DNA from: Fimbriosthenelais zetlandica
Taxonomy: Eukaryota
Length of the DNA stretch: 64,000 nt
Assembly (NCBI GenBank): GCA_977030845.1
Contig: OZ365115.1
Span: 12,834,001-12,898,000 of the forward strand
Direction: 5' to 3'
Both the position numbers and the translations under genes were made by a program. The notes below the pieces were generated by a model. The model was not told the DNA's origin and did not search any database. It saw only the letters and a list, made by a program, of their open reading frames with translations. This document shows positions 1-41,949 of this stretch, in pieces (positions within the stretch are counted from its first letter, which is position 1; every line of letters starts with the position of its first letter).

Positions 1-597
1 ATATCAAAGATATTTTGGTTGGATTTCAAGATGGCGGCCATAAAAAGATTTTAAACTTCTGTAATGGTTTAATGGAAGAATAGATTTCAAATTCACTACT
101 GTGATTTCATCGATTATCTCCATGTTTTCACACCTTATGTAACCCATCAGACCTCAACGTCTCGTTGTATTCCATTTTATAAATATCTTCTTTTGAAAGG
201 TCTAAGAACTAACTACTATAATTGTTATTTCACTGGAGGGGCAACTCAGAACCAGGGATCTTTTTTTACATAAACAACCATTTCTAAATATTCTCCCTTG
301 AATTCAGGAATATTGTGCCTGTATTTTGTTCTTTCATCTTTCCCAAAAACCTAGAGTGCGCTTTTGTCCGATTCCAAAGTCCCCCTTCTGTGAGGCCATA
401 GTCAATGATGAGACCATGATATACTAAAGCTACGTATCTTATACATTCTTACTTCAGCTCATATACCTATAGCTCCCACGAGAAAGTAATAAGGTGTTAA
501 GTGCCAAAAACGCTGGGAGTGTTAAACATGATTTAGCTTGCACGGGGATGATGGCGACGTCCTTAACAACGGCCTACAGTGAAAGCTAGCAGGCGAG

Positions 598-604
598 TAT
601 ATAA
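598..604 (+). promoter_or_regulatory. TATA box of the small GPI-type gene
   Basis: TATATAA(G) at 598-604, about 80 nt before a canonical donor (CCTAG|GTAAGA, intron starts 683); implies a start site near 628-632. Confidence 0.7.
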
Positions 605-629
605 GCGGGCACTGATGAAGGAGAAAGCA

Positions 630-682
630 GAAACTTTCCATCTACCAAAGCAGTCCAATCACCAATCACAGAAGCAGCCTAG
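630..682 (+). other. Non-coding first exon (5' UTR); 5' end approximate
   Basis: Lies between the TATA box and donor AG|GTAAGA at 682/683. The next acceptor (TTTTGAATTCCAG|G, 948/949) is 27 nt before the ATG at 976. Confidence 0.6.
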
Positions 683-975
683 GTAAGAACATTATATTCC
701 TGCAAGCATTGACCAACTTTCTCATTTGAAAACACTTTTGTTCCAAGTTCAATATCTGTGTTCCAACTGAAACCTTTTCCATTATGCATTAGGCGCATTA
801 TGCTATTATTTGTATATCTATTGAATTCTCACTCATAGCCAGTTGTTAGTTCCATTGCTGTTATAAATAGTTATTATGAATATGTTTTTCTTACTTAATT
901 TAAATCTCAAAGAAAATATTTAAGCCTTTTTTACGTTTTGAATTCCAGGTTCGCACCTTTCTAAAACCTTTCATA

Positions 976-1021
976 ATGAAATTCTTCCTCGCCATCTGCC
1001 TTATCTTCGCCATTGCCTCCG
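976..1021 (+). CDS. Coding exon 1 of a 70-aa secreted, GPI-anchored mucin-like peptide (signal peptide)
   Basis: ATAATG start; translates MKFFLAICLIFAIAS plus 1 nt (basic n-region, hydrophobic h-region); ends at TCCG|GTAAGT (phase 1). Confidence 0.9.
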
Positions 1022-1578
1022 GTAAGTTTGTTTTACTCCTACTTCAGTGTTTCTGCATGCCTGACTAATCATCTGTCAGTCTGTCGAGAAGCCAGACAGT
1101 CAGTCGGCTATAGCCAGACAGTCAGTTCGCCAGAGCCATTTTAATGTTCTTGAACAAACATTTTTCCATCAAGTTTGATTTCTACGTGTAGATATTGTAC
1201 ACAATATGCATACCATATTATGAAATAGGTAAAATAGTTAAGCTTATAAGTGTTTCATGTTTCAACAAACGATTATTTCGAACTATCCGAGTGTATTGAA
1301 GCTTAAATGCGTGCTGGCACCCTACCATCAAGACTAATAAGTTAATACTATTGATATTCATTTAATCCCATATAAATTGTATTCAAGCCCTAAAAGTCCG
1401 ACCTGTTAAAGGGTCGCTGAACACTGAACGCTTATCCACACGGTCACAAAGCCTGGCAAAGTCATTAAGTCAATCCTGTCAGTTCTATAAAACGCAGACA
1501 AAATCTTTCATTTCAAAACTAACCATAAATTCGTAATTCCTATTAATAATTATTATATAAATTTACTCTGTTTTTCAG

Positions 1579-1652
1579 CTGCATTGGGCCTCTCCACACA
1601 AGCCATGGATGAGACAACCATGGACCCCACCACGGCTGCACCCTCAACTACA
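1579..1652 (+). CDS. Coding exon 2 of the 70-aa peptide (end of signal, Thr/Ser-rich core)
   Basis: Acceptor CTCTGTTTTTCAG|; open in the required phase 1: (A)ALGLSTQAMDETTMDPTTAAPSTT; donor ACA|GTAAGT (phase 0); GC-rich relative to the flanking introns. Confidence 0.9.
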
Positions 1653-1835
1653 GTAAGTACACATTATGACATAATCCAAATAACTTTAAATTCATTTAGG
1701 CCTAAGTCAGGCTTTTCATAATAGAAAATAACATGGGGATATTACTTAAATCGAAAGTACATACATCATGTGCACTGTAACATATCCCTCATATTGCTTA
1801 TAAAGTATTTAATGATTATTTTTGTCTATTTTCAG

Positions 1836-1928
1836 ACCGTAGCTGGCCTGGGAGGTGGTGCGTCTGCTGTGAGCGCCTCTATTGGACTGCTCATTCTCAC
1901 CGTCACCGCTGTTTTCCTCCGACACTAG
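1836..1928 (+). CDS. Coding exon 3 of the 70-aa peptide (GPI-attachment-signal-like C-terminus)
   Basis: Acceptor TTTGTCTATTTTCAG|; phase 0: TVAGLGGGASAVSASIGLLILTVTAVFLRH then TAG at 1926-1928. Small-residue run, spacer and terminal hydrophobic stretch. Confidence 0.88.
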   Translation, partial: TVAGLGGGASAVSASIGLLILTVTAVFLRH

Positions 1929-2523
1929 ATGTCGCCACCGACAACTGATCTATCTCAACTATCAACCATCAACATTATTTATTGCCCATCAATGTAAATA
2001 CCATCAACATGATTGTGATTATACTTCATGTTAACTAATTTATATCAGTATTAGTTCCATTCACTGGAAAGTTCAAACTCAAATCATCATTTCTCCACAG
2101 AACCTTTCCATTCAGACCATTCCTTGTCCAACTCTTTCCGTTTCCTTGCGTTGAGTCATTTACAATTCTATCACCAATTAAGTTATTTAAAAACTGAAAT
2201 GTATTTAAGATTTAAATGCAGCCTTTGTGGTTACCATAGAAACTGTGTAAAAGGCACTGAGGGTTTTAGATCCAATATGACGTGCCTTAACGAGGATGGA
2301 GTTTGACTGCCTTGCCATGCTATGTTTAAATTTCATTGTTCTTCTGTTGTTCTAAGCTTGAGTATTGTCAGTGTAGATATCGCTTGAAGTGTACCATTTA
2401 TTTAAAAATTTACACGTCTGTTATGGTTTAATAGAACAATTGATTTCAAATTCACTTCTGGGATTCCTTCTGTTTCAATTGCACATTTAAATGAACAAGT
2501 CTGTGATATGTTTGTTATTAAGT

Positions 2524-2529
2524 AATAAA
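2524..2529 (+). terminator. Candidate polyadenylation signal of the small gene
   Basis: First AATAAA I found downstream of the stop, about 600 nt away; no transcript support available. Confidence 0.3.
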
Positions 2530-2685
2530 TCATTGAAAATAATTTTGTTCTTGGTGTATATATCCTAAATGAATACAAGTATAAGGGATATTGGTCCTGA
2601 CAAGGCTTTTTCAAGGAAATATTATGACAAAACTTTAAACGATAGTTCATAAGTAGCATAATGATTTCTTAAAGAGTTCTAAAGG

Positions 2686-41580: not shown

Positions 41581-41949
41581 ACAATGTAGTATAGGTAAAG
41601 TAACCAATAACCCAGGAGATAACAATGTAGTATTGACAAAGTGACCAATAACCCAGGGAAAGACAATGTAGTATAGGCAAAGTGGCCAAGAGCCCAGGGA
41701 AAGACAATGTAGTATAGGCAAAGTAGCCAATAGCCCAGGGGATGACAATGTAATATAGGCAAAGTGACCAATAACCCAGGGAAAGACAATGTAGTATAGG
41801 CAAAGTGGCCAAGAGCCCAGGGGATGAAAATGCAGTATAGGCAAAGTGGCCAATAGCCCAGGGGAAGGCAATGTAGTATAGGCAAAGTGGCCAATAGCCC
41901 AGGGGATGGCAATGTAGTATAGTCAAAATGGCCAATAGTCCAGGGGTTT
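41581..41949 (+). repeat. Minisatellite, 9 x 41 bp
   Basis: Consensus ACAATGTAGTATAGGCAAAGTGGCCAATAGCCCAGGGGATG; nine head-to-tail units of exactly 41 bp. Confidence 0.97.

What the first reader, a model, noticed from the sequence alone, without database searches (positions are those of the whole stretch)
598..1928. Hidden 70-aa spliced gene: a CD24/CD52-style minimal GPI-anchored glycopeptide in an invertebrate-type genome
Seen in sequence: TATA box, non-coding exon and three phase-compatible coding exons with canonical GT-AG give MKFFLAICLIFAIASAALG-LSTQAMDETTMDPTTAAPSTTTVAGLG-GGASAVSASIGLLILTVTAVFLRH. The ORF track misses it. Established: an N-terminal signal peptide plus small residues, spacer and terminal hydrophobic tail with no cytoplasmic domain is the GPI-anchor signature, and mammalian CD24 and CD52 are tiny glycan-carrying peptides of this design. 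Inference: after cleavage (about G19/L20; omega about G46-G48) only about 28 aa remain, with 10 Ser/Thr, no Cys and no N-glycan sequon. That would be an O-glycan display stub on the cell surface. A TATA promoter suggests strong cell-type-specific expression. It may be an unannotated, fast-evolving surface-marker family; I infer architectural convergence, not homology to CD24.
Basis: partly seen in the sequence, partly recalled or inferred. Interest (0 to 1): 0.72.

Follow-up and report, generated by a model that had tools for sequence, protein, structure and literature searches.

The report
Tiny GPI-type mucin-like gene family

Summary

Comparative evidence shows it is a real coding gene:
- It is the last of six tandem copies.
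- Exons are 96-98% identical, against 77-83% for the introns.
- 12 of 15 variable coding sites are synonymous third positions (dN/dS 0.105).
- The mature peptide is identical in all six copies.

A tail-exon profile finds 31 intact members in six subfamilies on five chromosomes, all with the same exon plan and shared promoter motifs.

The architecture fits a signal peptide, a 29-aa acidic Thr/Pro-rich stub and a GPI-attachment signal. The small-residue triplet at the predicted attachment site (the omega site) is the best-conserved part, and the terminal hydrophobic stretch keeps only its hydrophobicity. Anchoring, glycosylation and expression could not be tested, because no RNA runs were listed.

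No homologue exists among 1.84 billion representative proteins. The design is convergent with CD24/CD52, Echinococcus apomucins and plant AG-peptides.

"Fast-evolving" is not supported.

Unexpectedly, 22 members lie head-to-head with beta-tubulin genes, 20 of them in a roughly 20-fold amplified alpha/beta-tubulin cassette.

The parts
1..190 (+). End of the 3'UTR of the upstream paralogue (array copy 5). Positions 45-111 repeat 2404-2470 of this gene at 82% identity.
490..629 (+). Proximal promoter block, the most conserved part of the repeat unit (JC distance 0.022 among the six copies). It holds TTTAGCTT at 532-539, an X-box-like GTCCTTAACAAC at 559-570, GAAAGC at 581-586 and TATATAA at 598-604.
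   Evidence: The TTTAGCTT, GAAAGC and TATA-like elements are shared by the five divergent subfamilies aligned (A-E; alignment A1).
630..682 (+). Non-coding exon 1. The start is inferred as about 30 nt after the TATA box; the donor is AG|GTAAGA at 682/683.
   Evidence: The donor is kept at the same distance from the TATA box in all subfamilies. The TSS is not measured.
949..1021 (+). Exon 2: 27 nt of 5'UTR plus the ATG at 976. It encodes the signal-peptide n- and h-regions (15 codons plus 1 nt, phase 1).
1579..1652 (+). Exon 3: the signal-peptide c-region (predicted cleavage ALG|L) and the acidic Thr/Pro-rich core. It ends in phase 0.
1836..1928 (+). Coding part of exon 4: TVAGLGG-G(omega)-AS, the spacer AVSAS, the hydrophobic tail IGLLILTVTAVFL, then RH and the stop codon.
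1929..2545 (+). 3'UTR with conserved blocks at 1929-2060, 2108-2166 and 2222-2300, and AATAAA at 2524-2529.

Best explanation
Window 598-2545 is a functional gene, the last of a six-copy tandem array and one of a 31-member lineage-restricted family. It encodes a 70-aa precursor. The likely processing is as follows. A cleavable signal peptide (residues 1-19, cut after A-L-G) takes the precursor into the ER. GPI transamidase cuts at the invariant small-residue triplet G48-A49-S50 and replaces the marginally hydrophobic 22-residue tail with a GPI lipid. The remaining 29-aa peptide has 8 Thr, 2 Ser, 2 Pro and 3 Asp/Glu, and no Cys or basic residue. It is decorated with mucin-type O-glycans and displayed, or later shed, as a dense, negatively charged glycan stub on the apical surface of a specialised cell type. 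Six copies encoding an identical mature peptide behind a near-identical TATA promoter argue for amplification to raise dosage of an abundant product. Shown: the gene model, purifying selection, the family and its conserved architecture. Inferred: signal cleavage, GPI addition, O-glycosylation, abundance and cell type.
For: Gene model and coding constraint:
- Searches give exons at 96-98% identity against introns at 77-83%, 12 of 15 changes synonymous in this frame only, dN/dS 0.105, and the mature segment invariant.

Family:
- The tail-exon profile finds 31 loci and nothing else.
- The pattern gives 29 hits against 0 for the reversed control.
- All reconstructed ORFs are intact, 67-78 aa.

Signal peptide:
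- The n-region is MK and the h-region is 12 aa.
- Positions -3 and -1 are always [A/V]-x-[G/S/C] at the same aligned position in all six subfamilies, although the signal region is only 51% identical.

GPI signal:
- [G/C]-[A/V]-S is the only triplet that stays canonical for omega and omega+2 in every subfamily. S at omega+2 is invariant.
- The omega region is the best-conserved segment (84% identity, dN/dS 0.11).
- The terminal hydrophobic stretch keeps only its hydrophobicity (32% identity).
- The tail has an apparent insertion energy of about 0 kcal/mol, and only 0-2 polar residues follow it. Subfamilies B and C have no terminal Arg or Lys (B ends in His, C in Leu).
- It meets the published FT-GPI features: hydrophobic helices at both ends only, and the C-terminal helix no more than 4 residues from the end (PMC9876418).
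- Both Cys residues gained in the C10 subfamily fall exactly on the two predicted processing sites.

Other support:
- The GPI transamidase subunit PIG-T is encoded in the genome.
- There is no folded domain: AF2 gives two terminal helices and a coil.
- The analogous Echinococcus apomucins show the same pattern of conserved signal and GPI tail with a less conserved Thr-rich core, and they are the most abundant transcripts of their tissue (PMC3510090).
Against: - There is no expression or splice-junction evidence. No RNA or DNA run was listed, and the exact proteins are absent from a 15-billion-protein collection.
- No trained predictor (SignalP, NetGPI, NetOGlyc) could be run. The hydrophobicity scale was entered from memory.
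- GPI signals are usually poorly conserved, so 84% identity around the omega site hints at an additional role for that segment.
- The run ASAVSASIGLLILTVTAVFL (20 aa) could still span a membrane as a small-residue-rich helix.
- Constraint is weaker in the C10 subfamily (dN/dS 0.57 on few changes).
Confidence: 0.58

Rival explanations
1. It is a type I single-pass membrane microprotein. The signal peptide is cleaved, but the C-terminal segment (about residues 46-68) stays as a small-residue-rich transmembrane helix with a 2-residue cytoplasmic end. The conserved GLGGGASAVSAS would act as a helix-packing or oligomerisation motif.
For: The omega region is unusually conserved for a GPI signal (84% identity, dN/dS 0.11). 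It is rich in Gly, Ala and Ser spaced as in small-xxx-small packing motifs. A 19-20 aa window reaches an apparent insertion energy of about 0. AF2 draws one continuous helix over 43-69.
Against: The strictly hydrophobic run is only 13-15 aa and is interrupted by Thr or Ser. The membrane-embedded part is the least conserved segment (32% identity), which is unlike a specific packing helix. Subfamilies B and C have no Arg or Lys after the helix, and one C10 copy ends directly after it. An insertion energy near 0 is marginal, as reported for efficient GPI signals (own knowledge).
Confidence: 0.2
2. It is a shed or secreted apomucin. The GPI signal is used only transiently, or the anchor is cleaved, and the glycopeptide is a bulk building block of mucus, cuticle or tube matrix rather than a cell-surface marker. 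This is a variant of the best explanation that differs in the final destination.
For: Six copies amplified with an identical product and a strong TATA promoter suggest a bulk product. The Echinococcus laminated-layer apomucins, with an acidic N-terminus, Thr-rich core and shared GPI signal, are proposed as extracellular gel backbones and are the most abundant transcripts of the germinal layer (PMC3510090).
Against: A 29-aa peptide without Cys or repeats cannot polymerise into a gel by itself. No expression data exist.
Confidence: 0.12
3. It is a two-pass hairpin membrane microprotein. The N-terminal hydrophobic segment is an uncleaved signal anchor and the C-terminal one a second helix, as in tiny ER/Golgi proteins such as Kish and Yos1, which fool architecture-based GPI predictors.
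For: The FT-GPI paper reports exactly this false-positive class for 72-76-aa proteins (PMC9876418). AF2 shows two helices and a loop. The C10 subfamily gained two Cys at the luminal ends of both helices, which could form a disulfide.
Against: The N-terminal h-region is only 12 aa and is followed by a conserved (-3,-1) small-residue site in all six subfamilies. The loop is acidic and Thr/Pro-rich like a mucin stub. Both helices are poorly conserved in sequence (51% and 32% identity). There is no similarity to Kish, Yos1 or any other family.
Confidence: 0.06
4. It is not a functional protein gene: a transcribed or untranscribed repeat whose ORF is kept only because the duplications are recent.
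For: There is no RNA evidence, and the proteins are absent from protein collections.
Against: Introns have diverged by 21-28% while coding sequence, UTRs and promoter have diverged by 2-9%. Substitutions show a synonymous bias specific to this frame. Subfamilies with saturated dS (>1) still keep the ORF, splice sites, exon phases and promoter motifs. All 31 ORFs are intact.
Confidence: 0.04

Closest known systems
Mammalian CD52 and CD24 (minimal GPI-anchored glycopeptides)
   Same: They are tiny precursors made of a signal peptide, a very short Ser/Thr-rich mature peptide and a GPI signal. The peptide serves mainly as a glycan carrier: the CD52 mature peptide is 12 aa (PMC11982460), and CD24 is a small mucin-like GPI protein (PMC7379889).
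   Different: There is no sequence similarity. In mammals these are single-copy genes, whereas here there is a 31-member family with tandem arrays. The peptide here is acidic, with no N-glycan sequon in this copy. CD52 carries one N-glycan. The four-exon plan with a non-coding first exon is also different.
Echinococcus laminated-layer apomucins (EGC00317 group)
   Same: This is the closest match in design and also comes from a lophotrochozoan. It has a signal peptide, an acidic N-terminal part, a non-repetitive Thr-rich core (11 T + 3 S) and a predicted GPI signal that is almost identical among family members. The signal and C-terminus are much better conserved than the core, at >95% against about 63% (PMC3510090).
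   Different: The cestode proteins are proposed as extracellular gel components of a parasite-specific structure. Their cores are reported with interspersed basic residues, whereas here there are none.
Plant arabinogalactan peptides (AG-peptides)
   Same: Precursors are 50-90 aa, made of a signal peptide, a core of about 10-15 aa rich in Pro/Ala/Ser/Thr and a GPI signal. They form large families (43 genes in rice). This protein would pass their computational filter of >=35% PAST: 44% for the whole precursor and 55% for the mature part (PMC11941891).
   Different: The glycosylation chemistry is that of another kingdom (Hyp-arabinogalactan). There are no Ala-Pro, Ser-Pro or Thr-Pro dipeptide repeats typical of AGPs, and no homology.
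Trypanosoma cruzi small surface mucins (TcSMUG/TcMUC) (own knowledge; the family is discussed in PMC6544316)
   Same: They form a large multigene family of short, Thr-rich, GPI-anchored O-glycan carriers with conserved signal and GPI-signal ends and variable cores, arranged in tandem.
   Different: They belong to a protist parasite and have longer cores. They acquire sialic acid by trans-sialidase. There is no homology.

Membership tests
GPI-anchored protein (generic C-terminal attachment signal) | N-terminal cleavable ER signal peptide | tested here: met
   This was tested by rule only. The n-region is MK and the h-region is 12 aa. Positions -3 and -1 are [A/V]-x-[G/S/C], conserved at one aligned position in all six subfamilies. 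SignalP was not available.
GPI-anchored protein (generic C-terminal attachment signal) | Small residues at omega and omega+2, a short polar or flexible spacer, then a hydrophobic stretch running to within a few residues of the C-terminus, with no cytoplasmic domain | tested here: met
   The triplet is G48-A49-S50 (C-A-S in the C10 subfamily, G-V-S in C21). The spacer is AVSAS, followed by a 13-15-aa hydrophobic run and 0-2 polar residues at the end. The signal after omega is 22 aa long. It also meets the FT-GPI feature rule (PMC9876418).
GPI-anchored protein (generic C-terminal attachment signal) | Positive call by a trained predictor (NetGPI, PredGPI, big-PI) | not testable with these tools
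   No such predictor is offered, and the scripting machine has no network.
GPI-anchored protein (generic C-terminal attachment signal) | Biochemical proof: PI-PLC release or a lipid moiety | not testable with these tools
   This needs an experiment.
Mucin-type O-glycoprotein | A secretory-pathway segment rich in Thr/Ser with neighbouring Pro, and no folded domain | tested here: met
   The mature 29 aa holds 8 Thr, 2 Ser and 2 Pro (55% PAST). AF2 gives a coil at 28-42.
Mucin-type O-glycoprotein | Actual O-GalNAc glycosylation | not testable with these tools
   This needs lectin or mass-spectrometry data.
CD24 / CD52 (as homologous families) | Detectable sequence homology to the vertebrate proteins | tested here: not met
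   The word-indexed search gave no hit at E<=1. phmmer against 1.84 billion representatives gave only one repeat artefact.
Plant AG-peptides | 50-90 aa, signal peptide, >=35% PAST and a GPI signal | tested here: met
   The precursor is 70 aa with 44% PAST. This is an architectural filter only (PMC11941891).
Plant AG-peptides | Ala-Hyp, Ser-Hyp or Thr-Hyp dipeptide glycomodules and plant origin | tested here: not met
   The mature peptide has only one A-P and one D-P, the genome is animal, and there is no homology.
Echinococcus apomucin family | Sequence homology of the shared signal and GPI-signal ends | not tested
   The sequences are given only in a figure of PMC3510090 and are not held as text. 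Database searches gave no hit.

The most novel reading that the evidence does not exclude
The family is a cilia- or flagella-associated surface coat: GPI-anchored mini-mucins made by the same cells that use the amplified axonemal-type tubulin genes. Twenty-two of the 31 genes lie head-to-head, about 0.9 kb apart, with beta-tubulin genes. Twenty of them are a constant third member of a roughly 20-fold amplified alpha/beta-tubulin cassette, and all kept intact ORFs. The four subfamilies not linked to tubulin, including this array, carry an X-box-like (RFX-type) motif about 40 nt upstream of the TATA box at the same aligned place. If true, an animal would have co-amplified structural ciliary genes together with a dedicated ciliary-membrane glycocalyx peptide.
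Probability: 0.15. Interest if true: 0.75.

Novelty: new variant of a known kind. Interest (0 to 1): 0.5.

Why it matters
Genes this small, with coding exons of 15-30 codons, escape ORF-based and much homology-based annotation. Here a family of 31 of them was invisible to a 15-billion-protein collection. It adds an independent animal example of the "peptide as glycan stub on a GPI anchor" design. That design was known before from a few mammalian markers, cestode apomucins, trypanosome mucins and plant AG-peptides, which suggests it is a recurrent solution and may be widespread among unannotated invertebrate genes. The family gives clean material for studying what constrains a GPI-attachment signal, because the omega region is far more conserved than the rest. 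Its embedding in an amplified alpha/beta-tubulin cassette offers a directly testable hypothesis about co-regulated surface-coat and cytoskeleton genes in ciliated cells or sperm.

Tried and rejected
- Sequencing runs: none was listed, either for the 2-kb gene or for the terminal exon alone.
- Exact look-ups of the window protein and eight paralogue proteins in the assembly and protein collections found nothing.
- Homology searches were blank: the word-indexed search and phmmer against 1.84 billion representatives. The single hit, E 4.5e-4 to a 2097-aa protein, is a weak 34-aa match summed over 13 repeats and was rejected.
- Full-text searches for the tail motifs and for annelid GPI mucin-like genes gave nothing relevant. 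A search for tubulin arrays in annelids gave nothing either.
- Pfam scans of 20 ORFs flanking the array gave no hits, so the neighbours of the C25 array remain unidentified.
- AF2 on the single sequence does not discriminate between the GPI, TM and hairpin readings.
- My first omega-site heuristic depended on an arbitrary hydropathy threshold. I replaced it with the family covariation argument.
- No full-consensus RFX X-box was found in any promoter. Only relaxed matches were found, so RFX control stays a lead.
- No hidden alternative exon was seen.
Full report
**1. The observation**

- TATATAA lies at 598-604.
- A short first exon ends AG|GTAAGA at 682/683.
- Exon 2 is 949-1021. The ATG is at 976, the first AUG of the predicted mRNA, with A at -3. 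The exon ends in phase 1 at G|GTAAGT.
- Exon 3 is 1579-1652 and ends in phase 0.
- Exon 4 runs from 1836 to the TAG ending at 1928. An AATAAA lies at 2524.

**2. It is a real coding gene**

A direct repeat between 45-111 and 2404-2470 suggested that the window opens in the 3'UTR of an upstream copy. A search of the whole genome confirmed this. The window is G000:C25:12834001-12898000, and the gene is the last of six tandem units, 3.1-5.6 kb each, at C25:12.815-12.836 Mb. All six units carry all four exons.

In a six-way alignment the regions differ sharply:

| Region | Identity among the six copies |
|---|---|
| TATA/exon 1 block | 97% |
| Coding exons | 96-98% |
| First 270 nt of the 3'UTR | 93% |
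| Introns | 77-83%, with up to about 40% indel columns |

Every GT and AG is kept. A sliding conservation profile draws the gene model by itself. It shows a sharp block from about 490 to 690 (proximal promoter plus exon 1), then exons 2, 3 and 4 with the 3'UTR. No intronic block reaches exon level, so no hidden extra exon is indicated.

Of 15 variable CDS sites, 12 are third positions. dN/dS is 0.105, and the binomial P for the third-position excess is 2.9e-4. The three amino-acid changes lie in the signal peptide (F/L, S/P) and the terminal tail (I/L). The 29-aa mature segment is identical in all six copies although it holds seven synonymous differences. GC3 of the CDS is 0.60, against 0.32 GC in its introns.

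**3. A 31-member family**

The last exon also gave weaker matches elsewhere in the genome.
- A degenerate pattern for "AG + T-V-A-G-L-G-G" hits 29 sites, against 0 for the reversed control.
- A profile of six divergent tail exons (A2) finds exactly 31 loci and nothing more distant.

The 31 loci fall into six subfamilies:

| Subfamily | Location | Copies | Length | Notes |
|---|---|---|---|---|
| A | C25 array | 6 | 70 aa | contains this gene |
| B | C13 | 1 | 71 aa | |
| C | C21 | 1 | 70 aa | |
| D | C25, 33.25 and 34.04 Mb | 2 | 72 aa | |
| E | C10, 10.27-10.93 Mb | 20 | 75-78 aa | NTT sequon |
| F | C27 | 1 | 67 aa | NDT sequon |

I read or reconstructed all of them. Every one has the same plan:
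- a TATA-like box;
- a non-coding exon ending AG|GTRAG about 80 nt downstream of the box;
- a signal exon in phase 1;
- an acidic Thr/Pro-rich exon;
- a tail exon.

All 31 ORFs are intact. One C10 copy has a GTAACT donor and an Arg in its signal, and it may be decaying.

Promoter motifs are shared by the five divergent subfamilies aligned (A-E): TTTAGCTT at about -70 and GAAAGC at about -18 of the TATA box. Between subfamilies dS is saturated (1.1-1.6), so the family is old.

**4. What the protein looks like and how it evolves**

The segments evolve at different rates between subfamilies:

| Segment | aa identity | dN/dS |
|---|---|---|
| Signal region | 51% | 0.31 |
| Mature core | 57% | 0.21 |
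| TVAGLGGGASAVSAS region | 84% | 0.11 |
| Terminal hydrophobic stretch | 32% | 0.51 |

The terminal stretch keeps only its hydrophobicity.

Despite the low identity of the signal region, positions -3 and -1 at one aligned place are always [A/V]-x-[G/S/C]. This supports signal-peptidase cleavage after residue 19.

Only one triplet stays canonical for a GPI omega and omega+2 site in all subfamilies. It is G48-A49-S50, which becomes C-A-S in E and G-V-S in C. The Ser is an invariant column. A49 is the second-best omega candidate.

After the omega site come a 5-aa spacer, a 13-15-aa hydrophobic run and 0-2 polar residues. Subfamilies B and C have no terminal Arg or Lys (B ends in His, C in Leu). 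The best 19-aa window has an apparent insertion energy of -0.6 to +1.2 kcal/mol, which is marginal (the scale was entered from memory).

This meets the published feature rule of FT-GPI: hydrophobic helices at both ends only, with the C-terminal one within 4 residues of the end (PMC9876418). The two Cys residues that arose in subfamily E fall exactly on the -1 position of the signal-peptidase site and on the omega position. At both positions Cys is one of the few residues tolerated, which I read as support for the two-cut processing model.

The mature peptide of this copy, L20-G48, has 8 Thr, 2 Ser, 2 Pro and 3 Asp/Glu. It has no Cys, no basic residue and no N-glycan sequon. AF2 gives only two terminal helices and a low-confidence coil. 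PIG-T of the GPI transamidase is encoded in the genome.

**5. Mechanism proposed**

The proposed steps are ER entry, signal cleavage, GPI transamidation at G48, mucin-type O-glycosylation of the Thr/Ser stub, and display as a dense anionic glycan layer. PI-PLC-type shedding may follow.

Six copies with an identical product argue for amplification to raise dosage of an abundant product. So does a promoter block that is the most conserved part of the unit (JC 0.022, against 0.21-0.28 for the introns).

These steps are inferred; none could be measured. No sequencing run was listed.

**6. Rivals**

- A type I TM microprotein. The conserved small-residue run would be a packing motif. Against it stand the short and poorly conserved hydrophobic core and the missing positive flank.
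- A shed bulk apomucin. This differs from the best explanation only in the peptide's final destination.
- A two-helix hairpin of the Kish/Yos1 type, a false-positive class named in PMC9876418. Against it stand the 12-aa h-region and the conserved cleavage motif.
- A non-functional repeat. Against it stand frame-specific constraint and 31 intact ORFs across saturated dS.

**7. Comparison with what is known**

No homologue was found by the word-indexed search or by phmmer against 1.84 billion representatives. The one hit there is a repeat artefact. No paper contains the tail motifs.

By architecture the family belongs with the minimal GPI glycopeptides:
- CD52 (12-aa mature peptide; PMC11982460) and CD24 (PMC7379889).
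- Plant AG-peptides. These are 50-90-aa precursors with at least 35% PAST, and rice has 43 genes (PMC11941891). This protein has 44% PAST.
- T. cruzi small mucins.
- Most closely, the Echinococcus laminated-layer apomucins. They have an acidic N-terminus, a non-repetitive Thr-rich core and a GPI signal almost identical among members. Their signal and C-terminus are much better conserved than the core, and they are the most abundant transcripts of their tissue (PMC3510090).

I therefore file it as an independent, convergent instance of a known kind, not as a member of any named family. "Fast-evolving" is not supported.

**8. Unexpected context**

Between the C10 copies lie beta- and alpha-tubulin genes. 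In 19 of 20 cases the mini-gene is head-to-head with a beta-tubulin. The beta-tubulin ATG and the mini-gene TATA box are about 0.9 kb apart, and each gene has its own TATA box. The mini-gene is also tail-to-tail, 1.5-2.9 kb away, with an alpha-tubulin. The amplified cassette is therefore alpha-tubulin, beta-tubulin and the mini-gene.

Both subfamily D genes are also head-to-head with beta-tubulins. The beta-tubulin ends in EEEGEFDEEEEGEEA, an axoneme-type EGEF tail (own knowledge). Its best solved relatives include an axonemal-type beta-tubulin (TUBB4B).

The subfamilies not linked to tubulin (A, B, C, F) carry an X-box-like element about 40 nt upstream of the TATA box at the same aligned place. 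In this gene it is at window 559-570, and in F it reads GTCGCCACAGGAAC. No promoter has a full-consensus X-box. Relaxed matches number 5, against 1.45 expected in shuffles.

Together these are two weak, independent hints of expression in ciliated or flagellated cells. I give that reading a probability of about 0.15.

**9. Verdict**

The gene and family are real, and the architecture reading is well supported by family covariation. GPI anchoring, glycosylation and expression are untested. Interest is moderate: it is an unannotated 31-gene orphan family of a known design with an unusual genomic partnership with tubulin genes.

Noticed in passing
G000:C10:10257000-10932000 (loci L030-L032, L034-L055): This is a roughly 20-fold amplified cassette of alpha-tubulin, beta-tubulin and the subfamily-E mini-gene, present in both orientations. 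The beta-tubulin and the mini-gene lie head-to-head about 0.9 kb apart. The mini-gene and the alpha-tubulin lie tail-to-tail 1.5-2.9 kb apart.
   Followed up: partly
whole genome G000: At least 49 loci encode beta-tubulin C-terminal exons at 95% or higher amino-acid identity (C10, C13, C25, C27, C19, C1, C37, C38). Several have in-frame stops. Many alpha-tubulin genes are interleaved. This is an unusually large tubulin gene complement.
   Followed up: no
window 383-2545 and the five upstream copies (C25:12815400-12834200): Within the array, the proximal promoter, UTRs and synonymous sites diverge 3- to 10-fold more slowly than introns (JC 0.02-0.09 against 0.21-0.28). The sequence upstream of position 490 is unalignable. 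Possible causes are exon-limited homogenisation or selection on the whole mRNA; this is unexplained.
   Followed up: partly
L027:5740-6170 and L027:4203-4228 (C13 paralogue): Intron 3 of the C13 family member holds a minisatellite of about 46 nt with about 8-9 units. A G run of about 26 nt lies just upstream of its promoter.
   Followed up: no
window 41581-41946: There is a tandem repeat with a 41-nt unit and 8.9 copies at 87% identity, with higher-order 82/123-nt periodicity. It overlaps three spurious minus-strand ORFs.
   Followed up: no
L013:1154-3628 (-) = C25:12805154-12807628: An 824-codon open frame lies about 9 kb upstream of the array. It is Ser/Pro-rich and low in complexity, with no Pfam match. 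It is possibly a large exon of a disordered nuclear protein.
   Followed up: no
L039 (C10:10354700-10357700): One C10 family member has a GTAACT donor after exon 3 and an Arg inside its signal h-region. It is possibly a decaying copy.
   Followed up: no
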